19,459 bases of DNA from Lenisia limosa (GCA_001655205.1 LPNZ01006843.1:1-19459); one strand, 5' to 3'. Positions 807-17,395 are shown, counted from the first letter of the stretch. The notes: generated from the letters alone by a model not told the origin. Made by a program: numbers and translations.

Positions 807-3151
807 CTATCTTTTGTGGATTTGAAGAGTCTTCGTATCAACAATCCTTGAAATGTATTTTGATCGACAAACTGCACATTTGGGTGAATGCGAAAACTCT
901 ACATGGTAAATGATACCGTATTGAAAGATAATAGTTACACTGTACTTCTCACTTTCTAAAGATGTGATGCAACTGTCATGATAAACATGCCCACAAGATA
1001 AGATGATGATCTGAATGATGAAATTGACGTCAGAGTACCCTTACCTTTCGTTTTGATATTAGCAATGAAGATAGGCAAATAGGACAGTTATTAAAACCGC
1101 GCTCCTGAGCCTAAAGAGGTCAGCCACACAATGATGTGGCATACAGTTTCTGCCAAAGAACACCAATTCGTTTGTCGTTCCAAAATCTGGTCATCGAGAG
1201 AGCTGGGCAATTAAGCAACACACAAGCCAACCTGAAAATGGCTCTTGCTGCAGTAAGGTCACTATCAAGTTGAGCACACAGCTGGTCAACTTCACATTCC
1301 CTTTTGTCTGCCTCCTTCACCAGCGCTGTTGCTCCGGTGGACACCTAATTGTAAATTATATATTGCGACTCTTTACCTTGCCTGCGGCAACTCTCATTCG
1401 TAATTCCCTGCTTTTTGGCGGGTTGACTTTCCACAATTGAAGAACCCAAACTCTGGCCTGATACCCCCTGTGATGGTAAAATAAGCGCCTAACCCCATCG
1501 GAAGATTTGAAATTTGAAAATGGAAGGAAATCCTTGAATTCCACATTAAAACGTGTATGACCGTCAAAATCTCATTCTTTGAGTCATTTCACAATGTTCA
1601 CTATCATTGTTCACATTGCGTAGTGATGTGATTCCTCATATCCACTCGTGATAATTGAACGACAAGTCTCAGATACTCTGATACACTCGGGGTGAACCCT
1701 CGGGTTATCTTATTTCATCAGTTCGACTTTGAAAGTCGGTCCTAACATAATATCATCATCGGTCCTAACATAATATCATCATAGCGCAGGTGGATAATTA
1801 TGGGAAAACATTACTTCGCATACCTAAACAACTTCTGAATCATAACAGCAGCAGACCATTTCATCCCAACTAATCCATCTGAAATCACTCTTTTCTATGG
1901 GTATGAGAAAAAGTCATACATTATCCAAATCACTGTTCCATACCTGGTAGTTTTGATGTCGACAAATAGGGCAAGCAGGAACCTATTGCGACATAACTAG
2001 GACATTGGGAAAAAATTGAAATGGTAAGATTACACCACTTACTTGAACACATTTCTCAAACGCGGAAATACAAGCCATGTGCACAGTATGGGAGCATGAC
2101 AAAAGAGCCTAGTGGTAAGGGTGAAGGGAGTAACTAGCTACTTGTTTCTTGGAACCGAGACTATCATGGCAGATGATGCAATCGTGCAAGGAATCCCCCC
2201 TGCTTCTTGAAACGGTTAACACCTGAAGATGAGCGGCACTCTTAAGATGCGTTTTATTGAAAATATTTTGAAATATCGTACCATATTCCAATCAGATTGG
2301 CTCATAGATGCTGTAGACTTCAACCCTGGTACCAATCCCATTCGCTGGGCTAACGGTTACATAAAATATCTGTATTACCTACCCAGAGTCTGCTGATTCG
2401 CATTGAAGTGAAGGCCCGTATCTGTGAACCCACCTCCCCACGGGATATCCTTGTTCAAAACAAGAGGTAAAACCTACACATGACAAACGTTACATCGACA
2501 ACAAACCTTGATTCTAACACTTGCTGGGGGTTTGAGTTCCGTTTCCACTTCAGGTACCTTGGTAGACGCAATCTTCTCTGACCCTCTCCTCATAGCTGAT
2601 GCACCACTTTTAGAAAGGGGTCCCGGAGGGGTCGAAGAAGCACGTTCACTTCGTGTTTCCGTTTTCTACAACTCTGTAATCAGGAAACCAAACACAAATA
2701 TAAACGATGGTGTTCCTTTTAAGCAAGTAATCGCCCTAACCCAGGCTGACTTTGAGTGAAGCTGATGAGGTTAATGCTCTTCTAACCCTTCGATCTGATG
2801 TCCTAGCAATCTATCAGGACAGACAAACAGTCCCTACCTCGTCACACTTGCCACTTTCGGCACATTCATTCCACCGAGCTTTCGGACATAGTGATCTTGA
2901 AGAGCTGCTGCCTGGGTACTCAGATGCCTAACCAGCTGATATTTACAGCCTCGAGTATCAACAACATATTTGCTGCATTTTGACTATCAATAGCATATTT
3001 ATAGCCTCGAGTATCATTGAGTATCAACAACATATTTGCAGCATTGAGTCCATACATTCGCAGTAAAGCATACCGTCAGAATTTCAGTGGACTTCTCGTC
3101 AGCAACTCCTTTGGTCCGCTTTGGGGTCATTGGGGAGGGACGTCGGCTCAT
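807..3151 (-). CDS. RNF32: RING finger protein 32 (two RING domains plus IQ-like motif), about 16 exons
   Basis: The spliced translation matches recalled RNF32 motifs in order: EILT|AAALQDH, TLAQRMGLV, SQSDWNM|VLTVSRSRGDSLHDCIICHDSLGSKKQ|ALLSCSHTVHMACISAFEKCVQ|VPACPICRHQNYQ|KRVISDG...MIQKLFR|GYQARVW, NNCPICLSSL...IILSCGHVYHDSCITSLEKFSHSPKCAVCRSKY. Phase-consistent GT-AG introns: 2912-3073, 2474-2506, 2350-2382, 2223-2281, 2109-2141, 1983-2042, 1895-1943, 1468-1823, 1345-1376, 1203-1231, 1111-1144, 1011-1044, 899-952. ATG at 3151, TAG at 809-807. Splicing between about 2675 and 2845 is unresolved. Confidence 0.9.
1736..1781. repeat. Perfect 23-nt tandem duplication in an RNF32 intron
   Basis: tcggtcctaacataatatcatca occurs at 1736-1758 and 1759-1781. 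Confidence 0.95.
2939..3045. repeat. Imperfect ~41-nt duplication in RNF32 intron 1
   Basis: atatttacagcctcgagtatcaacaacatatttgctgcatt (2939-2979) recurs at 2995-3045 with two substitutions and a 10-nt insertion (ttgagtatca). Confidence 0.9.
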
Positions 3152-3652
3152 GGCCTGAGGGTGGGTTGGATAGGTTGTTTAGTGGGGGGGGGGGCAATCT
3201 ATTTGATTTCACCAAACCCAAAAATACAACAACCAAACTAACTGGAATCAGGAAAGGAGTAAAACCAAAAAAAATAGACTATAAAGACTTTAAATTGGAC
3301 TTTTTCTCCGTCATTGTAGAGGTATCATGAAAACCTTAATCAAGGATTTACATGAATCCAAGGCTTTTTACTTCAAATCAAATGGGTTCTCATCACTTTG
3401 ACAAAGGCTCGGCAAAGGAATGTGTGATGACGTTGCGAGCCTGTCCAGATTCAAACCTGGACCAGTGTCCCCCATTCTATACACCTCCTAGATTCAGATT
3501 CATTCATCTATTCATCTATTCAGCATCTATTAGTATATTAGTAATTAAGTATATTTTTTTATTTATAATATACTCTTTATATGAAAATAAAAAACATTAA
3601 AAGTGTATTCTGCTTTACTCCTACGACAGAACTTTCTGTGTAATAAAAGGAT
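3152..3652. promoter_or_regulatory. Putative bidirectional promoter between RNF32 and HAP2
   Basis: 501 nt separate the divergent ATGs (3151 minus, 3653 plus). The region contains a G11 run (3184-3194), ATTC/ATCT short repeats (about 3490-3532) and an AT-rich block (about 3530-3610). Promoter function is inferred. Confidence 0.5.
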
Positions 3653-6600
3653 ATGAGTCAGGATTATCACGCCTTATCGTTCTTACTAGTAGTATTATTG
3701 TTTACTGGAGTTATTGGAACCTGGACAGTACAAAAATGTAGCGACTCGCCCACCTTGGAGTGAGTACTATGACAGTAAGCAGCCCTAACCTGTTTAGCTG
3801 TGTGGATGGCAACAAATTGGTGTTTCAGCAAGATATTAGTTCAAATAACGCGGAAATTCAGCTTGCAGAAGGTTGGCTTGGGCATTTTGATGATTTGACT
3901 TTCTCCAATCTGATAGGGGAATCCAATCTTCTTAGTTCCAGTTTTGTTCTGCTCCTCCTCCACCACGATTTGACGACCCAGGAACCTTTGTTAATGACAA
4001 TGATGGGCTGAAATGGATGGTTACATCAGATATCACCATCCACATCGCCCTCAACGGAAATGTCAAATACTGTATGTGAGGATTTTTTTGGACTTGGGGA
4101 ACAGGTATTGATCTTGTCTTTGGGAAACACTGATATTTTAAATCGGATATAGCAGGCATTAACAAATGGTGTTTTAATTAATCACAAACATGGGCATTTA
4201 TGTTGTGGAGCCCGACGACTCGTTCTGCCGCCTTGCGTTCTGCTCAAGTTCCTATCTTCCTTAACTTCTGATCTGCCAACTTATTATGCGCTAAAAATTC
4301 AATTATTGGCTTTAATTCTGCATTTCTACGTATTCTCTAATTCTCTGATGGTATATCCGCTCAAACCTCAATAACGGCCCACATAATGTCTATTCCCCTT
4401 TCCTCCTTGTACATACCAATAACCCGTTTAAGTAGTATGGTCTTTGTTTTTTGTATCTTCAGACAATAAAACTATTTTTTTATTATTTTGTGGTGTACCA
4501 TCCATGTTTGTTGTTTCTACATTCCATTCCCACCAACACCGCCAGACTTGTCAACGCGACAAATCGACACAGTCAACGAAGCTGAAGTCGTCAGAGTACA
4601 GAACTCCGCAATCTCGTGGGCTGGCTTTATTATTAGTGTAGCCTGGCTAGCTAGTATTTGTTCAATATAAGCATCAATGTTGAAGTGTTCCCTTGGAACT
4701 TGAGGGAGTCAAGGAATTCCGAAGTAACTGTTTAGGACTTGTCCTTCATCATCCATCTGTTGCACCGAAAGCGGTCTCAAATGGTGGGCTTGGTTCTTCT
4801 GTTTGCGTCCACATTTGCTCTATTTTTTTTACTTGTTGCGTTTTGCTTCCACCACATTAATCTGTTCTCTTCAGCAGTGACCCTTTTAGGGAGTACAAAC
4901 TAAACATGGGTGACGAATATGGGGTGTACATATTCCAAAATGCCCTGTTTGAGTTCTCCTCCACTGTCACCGTCAACACTTTCACCCACCAAATGAGCCT
5001 TGAAGCCACCTCGAGCCACTCCAATATGTCCTCGGTGGTAAGAGGGGGCTAAATGTCGATTTTCTTAACCAAAAACGACCACATAACATAGCGTTCTTAT
5101 TTTTTTCAAGTACTGGGAAGTTTCCTACATCATCATAACTACAATGTGAAACATTGAGTAGTGCGAGACAGTCTAACAATGAAGGAGTTCTACACAGGAG
5201 ACATAGGTCAGAATGACATCAAATTACTATGGATGAAGGGCTCTCAATCACAAGGTATGAGAGAGCAGTCGAGAGTGATATTAATTCTGTGGTGCTTATA
5301 CTTTAGCCTTCTTTGTCGAGCGGCGATATATGGGAACTGAAGTCAACAAACTTGGGGTCTCCACGGCCGGCTTTCTGTCTTCAGCAAGTTGCCAAAAGGA
5401 TAACTTTGCCCTTTCCAGGATTCTCACTGATGATGGAATGAAACTAGTATGTCACCCCTTGGCTCCTTCTGACCTTGCAGATGTCCGATTTTCTGACAAA
5501 TAAACCTGAAGACCTTTTCCTTGGCTGCTCTCGAGCCGAATCAGAGCCAGATAGCTTTATTGTATGAGGGAAATGTTGCATTTTTCAAACTACTATCAGC
5601 CAAGGTCCTCCACCTCACAACCCAGGGTTTAAGCTGCAGCCATGGCTCAGGTATCTTAAAGGCACGCATAGACGTTTCCCCTATCACCCCCCTCGTCGCG
5701 TCCTATGGGATACCTATCTTTACGGTTTGCGCAAACGCTCTGGAAGAATTTCTTGAGAACAGGGTCTGACTTTAAAGCTTGCCAATCTAGAGGAGTTCCA
5801 ACTTGGACGAACTGCGGCATCAGTTATTGTTAGCATTGAAAACGACTCTGTTTTTGATGGTGAGCGGGGGTAAAGGCCTACTTACGCGATGTACAGTGAC
5901 CAACTTCTTTCCCCTAGTTTACAAATGAACGGGCCTTCCAATATGGCTGACTCTTCAGACGACTTTGTAGTTGCAGTGTCGGAGTGTTCAGTGTCAGTTC
6001 GCACTTCTGCAGCACAAACGGTTTGTTCAATACCAAAAATAGTGATGATTTCACCAAATTACTTCCTTGTAGCTTTTTGGATTTGGGTGTTTGATTTGCG
6101 TAGGTCCATCTTGCTGCTGGTAAAAAGACCACAACTCCCCTTTTCTTCAATGTTGTTGTGATGGGTGCTCCTCAGGTAAGAAACCCTAAAGGTGCTTTGA
6201 TAACTTGGCAGAAGGCCATAGAGCCGAGCTTCTACTGTACCCTAACAGCCTCAACTGGCACAAAAGTGGGATCGGGGTGGTACCATTCCACAACACCCAT
6301 CACCTGTTGAAGCTGACCAAAAAGGTGATGGCCACAGTGACGGCAACCNNNNNNNNNNTATTGAGTCGCACGAGGCCTATGTCGCCGCCGCCATCGCCGA
6401 GCCGACTGCCGATGGCTCCTGCGCTACCGGATAGTGGGGGGTAGTTCTCAAAAGCTAGGGAAGCTGTCTTGGACATATGATTAAAAATCGAAGAGCAGGT
6501 TTCTTGTGTGAATAATAATTCTTAAATCAAATCCCTACCGAGTGAAAGCGGCAAAATTAGTGTTAATCAAATTATTATAACACACCAAAAGGAATAGCGT

Positions 6601-8029
6601 ACTTTGGACATCCACGACAAATACTCTCACCTTTGTTACTCCTCCCCAAGTGTATACGCCGACGACACTGGTACTTGCACTTGCTCCAGTCGATGCGCGA
6701 GTTGCGAGGAAGGCTTCATTTCAACAGAAACAAACTGCGCAACACCCAATCAAGGCGTAGGCATTGCAATTGTGTCGTTTCATTTGAGGCTTTGCTGAAC
6801 ACACCTTTACTACTCTGCCTCACTTTTCAGATAACCCTCAACGACAATGTGAGTCTCATCGTCAACTGGTCGCAGGGTCAATTTGCCATTCTCTCACTTC
6901 TCAGGTGACATCGCTTTTACCGGATCTGCAGAAGACAAACTCGACTACTTCCATAAATTTCACCAGCGATGTCCCCAGTGTCTCCTCTACAAGTGTATGA
7001 TGGTTTTGCTGTACTATTACTTAGCAGATTATGTGGCATTGATCTGCAATTCACCCGTTCGTACAGAAGTAATCTATTTAGGGTATCTTGTTGGCTGGAC
7101 TTGTGCTCGTGACAATCATGCTCTTCGTAAGGGGGAGGGGGGTTTGTTCAATTCAAGGAAGAAAATGGATTCCAGATTTTCTTCCAAGAACTAAGATTGT
7201 AGCGGCCTAAATGCGCGGCAAGAAAGCCGAAGAAGAAGTTCTCGATCCATGACGCTTTCCTTGAGTTCATGGAGTCTCAATCCCAAACACCAAGTACGCT
7301 GTCTTATTTGAATTCAACTCACTTTTTCAGTTCAAACCCCAATGAAGAAAAAGAAGGGTTTCACGGAACCCCAATTTGAACAATCTTACCAGGACTCCGT
7401 CTCTCAGAGGGACTTGGTTGGTACCATCGACTTTGAAAGAGCCCCTTGGTTGTCTCATTTCTTAGGAATTCATGAACCAAACCCTCTACAATCTGCGTAA
7501 TAAAGGAATGTACCAAGTACAGGTCCAAAAGCCAAGTGGGGAGGTTCAAATCTTCTTTTTACTCGCCATTTTATAACTATGATGAAATTTTGGACTTTTC
7601 CAAGACTAACTCTCTAGTTGCCAACCTGCCTCCAGCTTCACCATATGTTAGTCCGGGACTGAGAGGGTAATAAGTGTCTGATGTTACAGACGCCAAACTT
7701 CCATAAAGGCCAGGCTCCAGAAAGGCCCTCCAAGTCGGCGTGCAAGGTACTTACCGGACTTCTTGACATGGCTGACCCTTCAGATCACTCCTCGAATGCA
7801 AGGTCCTGACAGCAGCTTCTCGTCCTTTGGGAAAACAAAACGAAAACTTGACCTGACCCCATCAGTTTGGAGGATTGTTTCTATTCACACCAAAAAGAGT
7901 CCTCTAACAGCACAGGGCCTTCCAACAGCTAACGACAATATGGCTGCAGTGAACGCTATCACTGCACATGACCCCAGAATGCTTCAAATGGTGAGTTTTG
8001 AGACCTCTTTTATCAACAAAGAGGGTTGA
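3653..8029 (+). CDS. HAP2: Divergent HAP2/GCS1-like gamete fusogen (class II fusexin), more than 20 exons, crossing an assembly gap
   Basis: Signal peptide MSQDYHALSFLLVVLLFTGVIG, followed by segments collinear with recalled HAP2 motifs: VQKCSDSPTLDCVDGNKLVF; TVNEAEVV; TCPSSSICC; GDEYGVYIFQNALFEFSSTV; FQVLGSF..NEFY; FFVERRYMGTEVNKLGVSTAGF (compare MLLERVRFTLDGLECNKIGVGYEAF); domain III SVIVSIEN..DFVVAVSECS..FYCTLTASTGTKLTKKVMATVTAT; Cys-rich GTCTCSSRCASC; TM GILLAGLVLVTIMLF (7082-7126); basic tail RPKCAARKPKKK. Introns include 3760-3797, 3872-3981, 4072-4545, 4784-4874, 5038-5091, 5146-5184, 5255-5306, 5447-5480, 5562-5604, 5725-5762, 5860-5958, 6021-6103, 6176-6211, 6266-6312, 7127-7202. The stop is either TAA at 7498-7500 or, with further splicing, TGA at 8027-8029. 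Confidence 0.78.
4190..4459 (-). mobile_element. Degenerate Ty1/copia-like gag (UBN2/Retrotran_gag_2-like) fragment inside HAP2 intron 3
   Basis: A 90-codon frame TILLKRVIGMYKEERGIDIMWAVIEV*ADIPSEN*RIRRNAELKPIIEFLAHNKLADQKLRKIG resembles the copia gag pattern MW..L...EL.....EFL......QLR.IG. It has three stops (4363, 4339, 4246) and no frameshift. Confidence 0.5.
6349..6358. other. Assembly gap (10 N) inside HAP2, just after domain III
   Basis: Run of N. Confidence 0.99.
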
Positions 8030-8349: not shown

Positions 8350-8445
8350 NNNNNNNNNNNNNNNNNNNNNNNNNNNNNNNNNNNNNNNNNNNNNNNNNNN
8401 NNNNNNNNNNNNNNNNNNNNNNNNNNNNNNNNNNNNNNNNNNNNN
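8350..8445. other. Assembly gap (96 N)
   Basis: Run of N. Confidence 0.99.
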
Positions 8446-14700: not shown

Positions 14701-17316
14701 AAAATGAATCCGTTAAAGGATTGTATTGCCACCCTTGCCAACAACCCTCTTTTTGTCGTAGGTTCACCCTTGTCAGTAATATCGCCAGAACGCTTGTACC
14801 CATTCCATTACCAAGCTAATTGAAACAACCCTTGTCGCCTGCGAAAATGAGTACCTCACCAACCACATTGTTGCAGGTAACAGTTTGGACATTGCAGCAA
14901 CTGTGCGAGAGTTTCAGTTTATTCGCGAACCCCAAACACTCTCCGTAAGATCTCAGTGGTCATGACATTTCAGGTTGATCAAAACGTGGAAGTCTTTGTC
15001 CACTTCAGACGTAAGTTTGACCTTGATTCTTGCGTTATTTTGTTATGTTTGATGTGAGGTCTTATTATGGCTAGACTCTTGTGCTGTTTAAAATTAATTT
15101 GGAGATACTTAGGCGGAGCATTTGACAATTTCAGCTGACATGTACCAGCAGCACTCTGAATGTGCCGTTTCATTCAAAGACCATAGGTGAGCAATTACTA
15201 AACAATTCAAAAAGACTCATAGTAACATTATATAGGTCCGCGTTCCGTGAACTTCATGGCTGGCGTATCAACACTGAGGCGCTCAACCTTTATTTGCCTT
15301 CTGTGAGCGTTCACCACGAGTTTAAAGTCTCTCTTCATCGAATATTCGTTTTGCTTACCTAACCACTGTTTAGTTTGTCATCGCGGCATTGTGCAAAGTA
15401 TGGCAGTCAAACGGTGAGACTTGTCTTTCTTTCATGACTTTGTAGAGAATATTCCCGCATCAATCAATCGACAGAACCTTTCTACCACTATCATCATGGC
15501 GCTTCAGGTAACTTGGGTCCTGTGGTAATGAGCCTTGCTTATCTATGTAGACAATCTTTGACACTGCTCTTCCGTGCACTCTCCACACCCACACGGTTAT
15601 ACCACTGATCCGTGTTTACAGTGGGCCATTATTCTTTTCTGTTATTGTGAATCTTTTCAACATAAACTTGACAATACTTATTACCTTTCTTGTCTCTTAT
15701 GTTGTGACCTTCGTTTATCATTTAAAGGCTTGATTGAGAATTGAGTAATAGTTTAAGTTATTTCCTTCCTCCCTATGGTATCTTCTTCGGGATGCAACCC
15801 TTTTGATATTCATAGTGACACTCCCCCATCGTCGTATTGACTTGAACTACGCGTTAATTGCAATCTTGGCCGACCATCCAAGTGCTACTGTGGCTAAGGG
15901 CGTTGATACCGTCACTCACATTACTCATCTTCATCTCGAATGTTGGCTCCACTTTCTGTTTCAAAAATGCACAATTCGCAAACAGAAAAAGGAAAAACTC
16001 TTTTTTTATTATCTCAAAAGGGATTTCTGCTTTACTGTTTTCAGTGTTCTATCAAGGCCTAATTGGGCCAAATGTACAACAAGACACCAGGCCGCCTAGG
16101 TGGCTCAGTCATGATATGATTGTGGGTATACTTGCACGTATATATTTATAACTATATATCATATACATAATCAGTCAACCTTATAAAAATAGAATAGCTT
16201 GATACTTTGGACGGATTCGATGTTACGAACATTTCTAATTTAGGCCACTTTTGACATTTCAGGTGGTAAACGGATATTCAAAACATGGTGCCGATTTTGT
16301 TGCAAAAGGTTTCATTAAAGCTCTGAACGTGCTTGATACTGAAAGTCTGAGGGGTCTTCTTGTTGTGTTGCATCAAATCTTACCTGCAGGTGATGAGAGC
16401 CTCATGATTGTTCCGATGGTCCAAATGGTGTCGATGGTTACCGAGTGTACCTCGTCTAATTCCGCTATTCCATTTAAACTACTGAACGCTGTGAAATGGA
16501 AGATGTTCCCTGAGAACGTTATCGGTTTGATGAAGCCATGATGTGACATTTTTAGCAAGAAAGATGAATAAATCTTTGAACTATGAGCAATGGGCGTCTC
16601 TCTTCTGCGCCAATATTGTTTGCCTAGACTTTCTTTTGTCTCTTCCTCGATTCTCTGTTACCATTTCAGGAAAACCAAAACATTCCTCACTCTATCTTGG
16701 AGATCATGAAGCATATCAGAAGGGCTTTGTTCAGAGCCGTAATTGAACAGGTTAGTTTGTGGCTTTTCTTTCTTTTTTTGGACAAAAATTAATTTAACAG
16801 ATGAATACTGCAATCAAAAGAATAAACCCAGCCTTTGTTCCCTCGATTAGCTACTTGAGAAACCCTCTCTCCCTGCTTGTCAAAGAAGGAAAGAACCTAC
16901 TAATTATGTTGGAGGGGTGTACACCTTCAAGTAAATCAATCATATTCGATTTAGAAGTTTTATTGTAATAATTCCCCTGTTTAAACGTATTTATATTCTG
17001 TTGTTAATATATTTCATTTTCACCATATTGCCTGAAAATTTTGGATCATAATTCAAGTGTGCACTCTTGGTGAAGAAATGATCATTTCAGGGTATCGGCC
17101 GCAGCTCATGCCATGTGTCCTGAGCTCGATGACATTCGTCTCATTTCACCCCTGACAAAGAAGCCTTTCAACTCTCTTCCGGCAAAAAGAACTGTGAGTG
17201 GCCCTTCTAAAAGGGATGTTATAATTACTGCTCACATTAAAGCGTGATGTGTACGAACCTCCCATCCACTACCAACACTGCTCGATACCCTATTACGACA
17301 GCGGTGCCCCCGCCGA
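11755..17316 (+). CDS. Large intron-rich gene (possibly more than one gene) of unknown family, running into the gap at 17317
   Basis: Starts MALMRHGKQDVRPEGVFTKFYDHLIT|DDVENHMLQSSFYR|CASSNLC (introns 11832-11897, 11941-12001). Many further exons are joined by short GT-AG introns, for example 14945-14973 (29 nt), 15414-15445 (32 nt) and 16525-16555 (31 nt). A long exon at about 13770-14150 reads EGNLNAAYEDVWTMTAAL... and the last visible exon reads RDVYEPPIHYQHCSIPYYDSGAPA. Several junctions are ambiguous. Confidence 0.6.
13379..13428 (+). repeat. Dispersed copy 1 of an exon-derived sequence (reads MAWTASARY), inside an intron of the 11755 gene
   Basis: The core gatggcgtggacggcttcggcca (13395-13417) matches the reverse complement of 17434-17456 at 22 of 23 positions. 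The flanking aatatctcttat is also shared. Confidence 0.85.
15236..16310 (+). other. Ulp1/SENP (peptidase C48)-like domain, apparently lacking the canonical catalytic His and Cys
   Basis: Ordered motifs AFRELHGWRINTEALNLYL (compare L.P..WLNDEIINFYL), TIFDTALPCTL (compare IFNTFF..L), LLIFIVTLPH..LNYALIAI..VAKGVDT (compare IFIPI..NHWSL.VI..YYDS) and VVNGYSKHGADFV (compare QQNGYDCGVFV). Compared by eye only. Confidence 0.4.
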
Positions 17317-17395
17317 NNNNNNNNNNNNNNNNNNNNNNNNNNNNNNNNNNNNNNNNNNNNNNNNNNNNNNNNNNNNNNNNNNNNNNNNNNNNNNN
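17317..17395. other. Assembly gap (79 N)
   Basis: Run of N. Confidence 0.99.

What the first reader, a model, noticed from the sequence alone, without database searches (positions are those of the whole stretch)
3653..7500. Highly divergent HAP2/GCS1-like fusexin hidden among micro-introns
Seen: no ORF in the track reveals it, but manual splicing yields a signal peptide, about ten segments collinear with HAP2 domains I-III, a Cys-rich stem, one TM helix and a Lys/Arg-rich tail. Established: HAP2/GCS1 is the ancestral eukaryotic gamete fusogen, homologous to class II viral fusion proteins, and is generally described as absent from Dikarya fungi and vertebrates. Inference: this is a strongly diverged member (EVNKLGV replaces ECNKIGV). 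If the host is a lineage with no known HAP2 or no known sex, this would be new evidence for gamete fusion there.
Basis: partly seen in the sequence, partly recalled or inferred. Interest (0 to 1): 0.85.

Follow-up and report, generated by a model that had tools for sequence, protein, structure and literature searches.

The report
Spliced membrane-protein gene, HAP2 identity unproven
The window holds a real, transcribed, many-exon gene for a single-pass surface protein, but HAP2 identity is unproven: its HAP2 signature is degenerate and one other stretch shows only faint likeness.

Summary
The gene is real. Poly(A) RNA contigs prove 14 complete GT-AG introns plus the exon-1 donor on the + strand.

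The N run at 6349-6358 stands for only 2 bases and is in frame.

My best model has 26 exons and 703 aa:
- signal peptide
- ectodomain of about 486 aa with 17 Cys
- Cys-rich stalk
- one TM helix
- basic tail of 175 aa

About a third of the coding sequence (exons 2-6 and 11-14) rests on prediction only.

HAP2 identity is not established.
- The Pfam copy's HAP2-GCS1 model (PF10699, 515 positions) hits no exon. It also misses the exon that sits where the signature should be, although equal-sized pieces of four solved HAP2s score 52-76 bits.
- That exon keeps 1 of 3 signature cysteines.
- The conserved AHCL..W segment is absent in all frames.
- In favour: a small profile of the start of domain III, built from solved HAP2s, picks the expected exon as best of 675 six-frame segments (0 of 5000 shuffles reach its score).
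- Also in favour: the signature-to-domain-III spacing fits (131 against 137-149 residues).

The decisive fold test could not be run, because the spliced protein has no reference. I put HAP2 relatedness at roughly even odds.

The parts
3543..3652 (+). 5' untranslated region. It holds a 20-codon upstream ORF (3581-3643).
   Evidence: RNA contig record 8 starts at 3543 and runs unbroken to 3759. The uORF was read from the sequence.
3653..3759 (+). Exon 1: start codon and signal-peptide-like hydrophobic stretch, then the first Cys.
   Evidence: The RNA contig ends its colinear part exactly at 3759, before GTGAGT. Hydropathy is above 1.6 for residues 4-29.
3798..3871 (+). Exon 2 (predicted; encodes C-VDGNKLVF...).
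   Evidence: The RNA depth arithmetic fits a start at 3798 after TTTAG. The coding score is positive in this frame only.
3982..4071 (+). Exon 3 (predicted).
   Evidence: Only acceptor found that joins the frame of exon 2 to this open frame (hand check of the nearby acceptors; the DP search preferred 4030). In the second copy, 4034 C>A is synonymous, the indel at 4064 is 6 bases, and beyond 4071 there is a 2-base indel. Coding score +6.1.
4546..4615 (+). Exon 4 (predicted).
   Evidence: Best path of the splice-graph search. Coding score +9.7. No RNA cover.
4736..4783 (+). Exon 5 (weak prediction; encodes TCPSSSICCTESGLK).
   Evidence: Frame-compatible and optional in the splice-graph search. 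The coding score does not tell the frames apart.
4875..5037 (+). Exon 6 (predicted; the largest exon, 54 aa).
   Evidence: Good acceptor and GTAAGA donor. Coding score +7.4 against -8.6 and -11.8 in the other frames.
5185..5254 (+). Exon 7. The 3' end is proven by RNA; the start is predicted.
   Evidence: RNA contig record 9 covers 5209-5254 and jumps to 5307.
5307..5446 (+). Exon 8: the positional equivalent of the HAP2 signature segment, containing EVNKLGV.
   Evidence: Both borders are proven by RNA. Searches with this exon gave:
- no Pfam hit at E<=10;
- no PDB hit;
- no relative among 1.84 billion representatives;
- 6.0 bits in a 4-HAP2 profile, rank 2 of 675.
5481..5561 (+). Exon 9.
   Evidence: 81 bases of RNA record 9 lie between the pieces 5305-5446 and 5626-5724. 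That fits this GT-AG-bounded exon exactly.
5626..5724 (+). Exon 10.
   Evidence: The start is proven by RNA. The contig ends at 5724, directly before GTTTGC.
5778..5859 (+). Exon 11 (predicted): first part of the domain-III-like stretch.
   Evidence: Phase-0 join from exon 10. Coding score +3.4 against -0.1 and -12.6. Part of the profile match at 328-367.
5959..6020 (+). Exon 12 (predicted; encodes DFVVAVSECSVSVRTSAAQT): the core of the domain-III-like match.
   Evidence: Its open segment 5874-6158 is the best of 675 six-frame segments against the HAP2 domain III start profile: 10.9 bits, next best 4.6.
6104..6175 (+). Exon 13 (predicted). It may run on to 6265, because 6176-6211 is open in frame.
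   Evidence: This is the only open frame here. The coding score favours 6176-6211 being an intron.
6212..6265 (+). Exon 14 (encodes KAIEPSFYCTLTASTGTK), followed by candidate intron 6266-6312.
   Evidence: The allele difference 6262 A>T is synonymous in this frame but makes TAA in the rival frame. Differences at 6281, 6283 and 6288 fall in the candidate intron (sequence). Coding score +6.4 against -4.5 for the rival reading. Against: both RNA contigs run unspliced through 6266-6312.
6313..6433 (+). Exon 15, containing the N run 6349-6358 (true length 2 bases).
   Evidence: The DNA contig and two RNA contigs span the gap with 8 letters left out. The donor at 6434 is proven by RNA.
6651..6756 (+). 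Exon 16: Cys-rich stalk (5 Cys).
   Evidence: RNA record 12. Translation.
6831..6848 (+). Exon 17: an 18-base micro-exon (ITLNDN).
   Evidence: 18 bases of RNA record 12 lie between the pieces 6651-6756 and 6905-6994. This is the only GT-AG-bounded 18-mer that fits.
6905..6994 (+). Exon 18: Ser/Thr-rich membrane-proximal stretch with 3 N-x-S/T sites nearby.
   Evidence: RNA record 12..
7082..7126 (+). Exon 19: transmembrane helix GILLAGLVLVTIMLF.
   Evidence: Both borders are proven by RNA. This is the only hydrophobic window besides the N-terminus.
7203..7293 (+). Exon 20: juxtamembrane basic stretch with Cys (RPKCAARKPKKK...).
   Evidence: RNA..
7331..7416 (+). Exon 21 (tail).
   Evidence: RNA joints 7293>7331 and 7416>7466.
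7466..7535 (+). Exon 22 (tail).
   Evidence: RNA joints. Translation.
7618..7646 (+). Exon 23 (tail).
   Evidence: RNA joints.
7690..7746 (+). Exon 24 (tail).
   Evidence: RNA joints.
7784..7864 (+). Exon 25 (tail).
   Evidence: RNA joint 7746>7784. The loose end behind 7865 continues at 7916/7917.
7916..8026 (+). Exon 26: last coding exon, with stop TGA at 8024-8026 if it is not spliced again at 7987.
   Evidence: The RNA contig runs 202 bases past the joint. Translation. An AT-rich stretch follows.

Best explanation
This is one transcribed gene of about 26 exons (3653 to about 8026, + strand). It encodes a type I surface glycoprotein of about 700 aa, built of:
- a signal peptide
- a beta-type ectodomain of about 486 aa with 17 Cys
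- an Ig-like module that resembles the start of HAP2 domain III
- a Cys-rich stalk
- one TM helix
- a 175-aa basic cytoplasmic tail with a juxtamembrane Cys

My most likely reading is a far-diverged relative of the HAP2/GCS1 (fusexin, class II) cell-fusion proteins. It has lost the outer and inner cysteines of the signature segment.

If so, it would work as HAP2 does. The ectodomain inserts a tip loop into the partner cell membrane, trimerises and folds back so that domain III and the stalk pack against the core. That pulls the TM-anchored membrane onto the target. The basic tail sits on the inner leaflet.

Shown: the gene, most of its splicing, the topology, and the weak domain-III match.

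Inferred: the fold, trimerisation, fusion activity and any role in gametes.
For: Gene and splicing.

Topology, Cys count and basic tail.

Domain III start. A profile was built only from the stretches of At, T. cruzi and Chlamydomonas HAP2 that the PDB search printed.
- It ranks the segment holding exon 12 first of 675 six-frame segments (10.9 bits; next best 4.6).
- It scores the spliced model 12.4-13.3 bits. 0 of 5000 shuffles reach that score; the best shuffles score 9.6-11.5.
- The match runs ungapped across two predicted splice junctions.
- Ungapped identity around the C-S motif is 13/38 to Chlamydomonas and 12/38 to T. cruzi.

Spacing from the signature Cys position to the domain III Cys: 131 residues here, against 137, 140 and 149 in the three solved proteins.

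Domain III second Cys: it sits in a Y-C-T context, 44 residues after the first (38 in At).

Signature exon: it aligns to G.E.NK[IVL]GV....F......C.

Tail: a positively charged C-terminal domain is the functional feature of HAP2 tails (PMC2841615).
Against: - PF10699 finds no exon piece and neither of two spliced junction-spanning pieces. Like-sized pieces of solved HAP2s score 29-76 bits.
- The signature exon keeps 1 of 3 cysteines and lacks the strictly conserved Gln.
- The signature profile score is at chance level: P about 0.02, and an out-of-gene frame scores higher.
- The AHCL..W segment is absent in every frame.
- In leave-one-out tests, real HAP2s score 35-52 bits on the domain III profile, against 5-15 here.
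- The V.V.N.G / Y.C pattern may be common to Ig-like sandwiches in general.
- A third of the model has no RNA support.
Confidence: 0.45

Rival explanations
1. A lineage-specific type I surface glycoprotein (adhesion or receptor type) with an Ig-like module and a Cys-rich stalk. It is unrelated to HAP2, and the HAP2 likenesses are chance plus features common to Ig-like domains.
For: - No Pfam, PDB or Atlas hit for any piece.
- No relative of the signature exon among 1.84 billion representatives or in metagenome contigs.
- The signature cysteines are missing, and the motif score is beaten by a non-coding frame.
- Region A is absent.
- By-eye matches to HAP2 turned up in mutually exclusive frames of 4153-4260, which shows how easily such matches arise (note).
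Against: - The domain III start match is not reached by any of 5000 shuffles, nor by any other of 675 segments.
- It lies at the HAP2-typical distance from the motif, about a 1 in 20 coincidence.
- Ectodomain size, stalk, basic tail and juxtamembrane Cys all fit HAP2.
Confidence: 0.4
2. The model joins two transcription units. The 5' module (exons 1-3, signal peptide) would belong to another transcript than the body from about 5200 onward.
For: - There is no RNA cover between 4155 and 5060.
- A second, rearranged copy carries only the 5' module (3635-3676 and 3980-4240) joined to an inverted piece of 6376-6694, and it is transcribed.
Against: - Same strand, frame-compatible exons with good splice sites, and positive coding scores in between.
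- The body has no start codon with a signal peptide of its own.
- The RNA coverage is patchy everywhere, including inside proven exons.
Confidence: 0.1
3. A decaying gene copy. The transcripts keep 6266-6312, which brings a TGA (6308-6310) into the frame of exon 14, so the product would be a truncated secreted fragment.
For: Both RNA contigs over 6232-6433 are unspliced at 6266-6312. A rearranged second copy exists.
Against: - Downstream of the putative stop, the frame stays open for about 1.1 kb of coding sequence (about 300 codons) across 12 spliced junctions.
- Allele differences are synonymous in exon 14 and pile up in the candidate intron.
- All other introns are cleanly removed.
Confidence: 0.05

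Closest known systems
HAP2/GCS1 gamete fusogens (Pfam PF10699; solved: Arabidopsis 5OW3, Chlamydomonas 5MF1/6DBS/6E18, Trypanosoma cruzi 5OW4, 7S0K)
   Same: - Type I topology and an ectodomain of about 490 aa.
- 16-17 ectodomain Cys. HAP2 has 16 conserved ones (PMC5332557).
- A stalk before the TM helix, and a positively charged tail (PMC2841615).
- A weak but above-chance match to the domain III start (V.V.I.N...[FY].[LV].VS.CS..VR...A.T), with a second Cys in a Y-C-T context.
- The right spacing from a G.E.NK[IVL]GV....F......C motif.
   Different: - No PF10699 hit on any piece, while like-sized pieces of solved HAP2s score 29-76 bits.
- Only 1 of 3 signature cysteines, and the conserved Gln is missing.
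- The AHCL..W segment (Cys 9 region) was not found.
- The domain III profile score is a third or less of that of real cross-kingdom pairs.
- The stretch between the CC motif and the signature is about 40 residues shorter.
- The fold and the function are unknown.
Other class II fold fusogens (nematode EFF-1/AFF-1, archaeal Fsx1, flavivirus E, alphavirus E1)
   Same: They share only the fold with HAP2, with no detectable sequence likeness (PMC5332557, PMC9259645). This precedent shows that a fusexin can escape sequence profiles.
   Different: Nothing here was or could be compared with them: there is no structure model and no sequence hit.
Generic type I receptors or adhesins with an Ig-like domain and a Cys-rich stalk
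   Same: Signal peptide, an Ig-like Y-x-C pattern, a C-x-C-x3-C-x2-C stalk, one TM helix and a basic juxtamembrane stretch.
   Different: No named family matched any piece.

Membership tests
HAP2/GCS1 (PF10699) | A match to the Pfam HAP2-GCS1 profile (515 positions, cut-off 27.4 bits). | tested here: not met
   No hit at E<=10 for 19 exon or open-segment pieces (18 distinct regions), nor for 2 spliced junction-spanning pieces. Like-sized pieces of solved HAP2s score 29.5-76 bits, but 21-23 aa cuts score nothing.
HAP2/GCS1 (PF10699) | The signature segment (Cr 352-399), with its conserved disulfide pattern and strictly conserved Gln (PMC5332557). | tested here: not met
   Exon 5307-5446 aligns to G.E.NK.GV....F......C but keeps 1 of 3 Cys and has no Gln. 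It scores 6.0 bits as a segment and 2.3 bits in the model; 119 of 5000 shuffles reach that score, and a non-gene frame scores 8.4.
HAP2/GCS1 (PF10699) | The conserved segment downstream of the fusion loops (AHCL.F...W, Cys 9; profile positions 143-174). | tested here: not met
   A profile from At, Cr and 7S0K finds nothing in the model, nor in any + strand frame of 3600-5320. T. cruzi HAP2 also escaped the At probe here, so absence is not decisive.
HAP2/GCS1 (PF10699) | The start of domain III (Ig-like): the N.G ... Y.L.V..CS..V pattern. | tested here: inconclusive
   Custom 3-sequence profile: rank 1 of 675 segments; 12.4-13.3 bits for the spliced model; 0 of 5000 shuffles reach that score. 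However, Pfam's own profile gives no hit on the spliced 58-aa piece, and real HAP2s score 35-52 bits in leave-one-out tests.
HAP2/GCS1 (PF10699) | Collinear order and spacing of the signature and domain III. | tested here: met
   131 residues here, against 137 (At), 140 (Tc) and 149 (Cr), from the positions printed and.
HAP2/GCS1 (PF10699) | Type I single-pass topology with a positively charged cytoplasmic tail. | tested here: met
   Hydropathy shows only residues 4-29 and 514-528 as hydrophobic. The tail is 175 aa with pI 9.8 and 11 K+R in its first 40 residues. This feature is generic.
HAP2/GCS1 (PF10699) | Sixteen conserved ectodomain cysteines in the family's distribution. | tested here: inconclusive
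   There are 17 ectodomain Cys. Five of them sit in the stalk and two signature positions are empty. A full alignment was not possible.
Fusexins / class II fusion proteins | A three-domain beta-rich class II fold with a trimeric hairpin. | not testable with these tools
   The spliced protein has no reference, and the tools take no read-through of stops. The longest referable coding pieces are 54 aa (exon 6) and the 54-68 aa open stretch 6104-6307.
Fusexins / class II fusion proteins | Cell-cell fusion activity and gamete-restricted expression. | not testable with these tools
   Only one poly(A) RNA run of unknown life stage holds the transcript.

The most novel reading that the evidence does not exclude
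The protein is a true class II fusexin descended from HAP2. It has shed one disulfide of the family's signature and drifted beyond the reach of PF10699. It comes from a lineage whose proteins are absent from a library of 1.84 billion representatives. It would then mark gamete (or other cell) fusion machinery in an unsampled eukaryote, and would show that profile searches under-count HAP2.
Probability: 0.4. Interest if true: 0.7.

Novelty: new variant of a known kind. Interest (0 to 1): 0.45.

Why it matters
HAP2 is used as the marker of ancestral eukaryotic sex, and its absence from a lineage is read as loss of that fusion machinery. A member that escapes the family profile would mean such absences need structure-based checks. 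It would also give a handle on sex in the host organism, whose identity I was not given.

If the protein is unrelated to HAP2, it is one more orphan surface protein and of local interest only.

Two results stand either way. The gene model shows that 18-base micro-exons and 34-base introns occur in this genome.

Tried and rejected
Searches with this gene's own pieces that found nothing:
- Exhaustive phmmer of the signature exon against 1.84 billion representatives gave only two repeat proteins with spurious summed scores.
- Word-indexed protein search: no candidate.
- ESM Atlas: nothing.
- Metagenome contigs, searched both with a spliced junction and with the exon peptide: nothing.
- Look-up of a window ORF in public assemblies: not on record.
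- PDB phmmer with six exon pieces: only noise.

Attempts to obtain HAP2 sequences:
- Searching papers and supplements for printed HAP2 sequences: nothing.
- I therefore probed the PDB sequence search with four short strings recalled from Arabidopsis HAP2. I used only what the tool printed back.
- A search with the domain III alignment returned only plant exon fragments. These add no diversity.
- A single plant sequence for the stretch between the signature and domain III gave no signal, and Arabidopsis domain III alone gave none either.

Model readings I rejected:
- Exon 3 starting at 3936 (wrong phase once exon 2 is placed at 3798).
- The frame-0 reading of 6229-6312 (an allele would carry TAA; negative coding score).
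- Candidate exons at 4153-4247 and 4190-4261 (no frame-compatible acceptor).

I also rejected my own by-eye alignment to remembered HAP2 as evidence, after it produced matches in mutually exclusive frames.

Full report
**What is in the sequence.** The window is intron-rich eukaryotic DNA of about 42% G+C. No ORF of 110 aa or more lies in 3653-7500. One poly(A) RNA run and one run of unrecorded type (probably DNA), both from the same study, hold this stretch. Laying their contigs on 3400-7900 gave direct proof of splicing on the + strand.
- A contig from 3543 runs to 3759 and then leaves the genome at a GTGAGT.
- Another contig joins 5254 to 5307 and 5446 to 5481 (81 bases), then continues at 5626.
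- A 434-base contig is accounted for exactly by 6376-6433, 6651-6756, an 18-base micro-exon at 6831-6848, 6905-6994, 7082-7126, 7203-7293 and 7331-7356.
- A deeper contig removes 7417-7465, 7536-7617, 7647-7689, 7747-7783 and 7865-7915.
- All of these introns are GT-AG and 34-217 bases long.

**The assembly gap.** The DNA contig and both RNA contigs cross 6349-6358 with 8 letters left out. The ten N therefore stand for two bases. With two bases, the frame before the gap (..TVTAT) continues into the frame after it (IESHEAYV..). That second frame is the one the RNA-proven junction 6433>6651 carries on. The two sides are continuous and in frame, with one unknown residue.

**Where the gene ends.** With the RNA-proven junctions, the frame stays open through six more exons. 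It stops at 8024-8026 unless there is a further splice at 7987. The tail is therefore 175 aa, not about 100.

**The model.** I searched the splice graph with a small codon model, keeping the RNA junctions fixed. I checked candidate exons with a three-periodic Markov score trained on the proven exons and introns.
- The model has 26 exons, a 2109-base coding sequence and 703 aa, with a median intron of 64 bases.
- About two thirds of the coding bases lie in exons that RNA touches.
- Exons 2-6 (3798-5037) and 11-14 (5778-6265) are predictions.
- One conflict remains. Both RNA contigs over 6232-6433 run unspliced through 6266-6312. Yet the allele difference 6262 A>T is synonymous in the exon-14 frame and makes TAA in the only frame that would need no intron. 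The other three differences fall in the candidate intron, and the coding score favours the intron. I read this as intron retention in the few molecules sampled.

**The protein.**
- A hydrophobic N-terminus (residues 8-26).
- An acidic ectodomain of about 486 aa with 17 Cys and five N-x-S/T sites.
- A stalk with five Cys in 35 residues.
- A single TM helix at 514-528.
- A tail that begins RPKCAARKPKKK and has pI 9.8.

It is also the architecture of very many surface proteins.

- No exon or open segment hit any Pfam family at E<=10.
- None hit a solved structure above noise.
- The signature-position exon has no relative among 1.84 billion representatives, in the word-indexed library or in metagenome contigs.
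- Nothing related to this exon is therefore in the searched protein libraries or metagenome contigs.

**Is it HAP2? Tests against real HAP2 sequences.** I probed the PDB sequence search with four short strings recalled from Arabidopsis HAP2 and used only what the tool printed. That gave the signature segment of four solved HAP2s, the segment after the fusion loops of three, the domain III start of three and more of Arabidopsis domain III.

A by-product is that this Pfam copy's PF10699 has 515 positions, so it covers the whole ectodomain. Calibration against it:
- signature pieces of 44-49 aa from the four solved proteins score 52-76 bits;
- domain III starts score 31 bits;
- the post-loop segment scores 29.5 bits;
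- cuts of 21-23 aa score nothing.

Against that scale:
- Exon 5307-5446, which corresponds position for position to the signature segment, gives no hit.

**Custom profiles built from the printed alignments.**
- Signature: the exon's segment scores 6.0 bits, second of 675 six-frame segments in the window. The first is a minus-strand frame at 16281-16379 reading FCNKIGTMF, inside what looks like a + strand coding stretch. The spliced model scores 2.3 bits, and 119 of 5000 shuffles reach that score. The exon keeps one of the three signature cysteines and lacks the Gln that Fedry et al. call strictly conserved (PMC5332557).
- Post-loop segment (AHCL.F...W): nothing in the model or in any frame of 3600-5320. 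T. cruzi HAP2 was also missed by the Arabidopsis probe, so this absence is weak evidence.
- Domain III start: the segment holding exon 12 is first of 675 (10.9 bits; next best 4.6). The spliced model scores 12.4-13.3 bits, and 0 of 5000 shuffles reach that score (best 9.6-11.5). The alignment runs without gaps over both predicted junctions (residues 328-367). Identity around the C-S motif is 13/38 to Chlamydomonas and 12/38 to T. cruzi. In leave-one-out tests, however, genuine HAP2s score 35-52 bits and this protein 5-15.
- Spacing: from the first signature Cys position to the domain III Cys is 131 residues here, against 137, 140 and 149 in the three solved proteins. A second Cys follows 44 residues later in a Y-C-T context (38 in Arabidopsis).

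**Weighing it.** Against them stand the degenerate signature, the missing post-loop segment and Pfam's silence. All of these are conserved from plants to trypanosomes.

A caution from my own work: comparing by eye with remembered HAP2, I found matches in two mutually exclusive frames of 4153-4260. I therefore give by-eye collinearity no weight.

I put a diverged HAP2 relative at 0.45 and an unrelated surface protein at 0.40. Mis-joined transcription units and a decaying copy share the rest.

**What could not be done.** The decisive tests are the full-length protein against PF10699 or HHpred, and a predicted structure compared with 5MF1, 5OW3 and 5OW4. The organism is coded, and nothing in the window let me name it. 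Whether its lineage is thought to lack HAP2 therefore remains open.

Noticed in passing
window 3623-3676, 3980-4240 and 6376-6694: A second, 90-95% alike and rearranged copy exists in both the run of unrecorded type (X1, probably DNA) and the RNA run. The start of exon 1 is joined through 30 other letters to 3980 onward, and then to an inverted copy of 6694-6376. In the RNA, 6503-6630 is removed with GT-AG ends on the minus strand. It looks like a transcribed chimeric partial duplicate of this gene's 5' module.
   Followed up: partly
window 6266-6312: Both RNA contigs keep this 47-base stretch, although allele differences and coding score mark it as an intron. Keeping it puts a TGA in frame at 6308-6310.
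   Followed up: partly
window 16281-16379, minus strand: An open frame reads SFNETFCNKIGTMF. It scores higher on the HAP2 signature profile (8.4 bits) than the candidate exon does. It lies antisense to a 100-aa + strand open segment (16239-16538) and is most likely chance.
   Followed up: partly
window 810-1040, minus strand: An open segment with a RING finger. It is closest to the C-terminal RING of Vps8 and Vps41 (E 9e-06 and 1.8e-05, below the Pfam cut-offs). This is probably the last exon of a neighbouring gene.
   Followed up: no
window 3400-3550 and 4155-4305: Contig word depth in run X1 (probably DNA) is 194 and 103, against about 46 elsewhere. This points to repeated sequence just upstream of the gene and inside the long intron 4072-4545.
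   Followed up: no
window 3581-3643: A 20-codon upstream ORF lies inside the RNA-covered 5' untranslated region.
   Followed up: no
window 8350-8445 and 17317-17395: Two further N runs (96 and 79 letters) lie outside the gene.
   Followed up: no
Pfam library: PF10699 in this copy has 515 positions and covers the whole HAP2 ectodomain. It is not the roughly 50-aa domain described in the 2017 literature, so a hit to it no longer marks the signature segment alone.
   Followed up: yes
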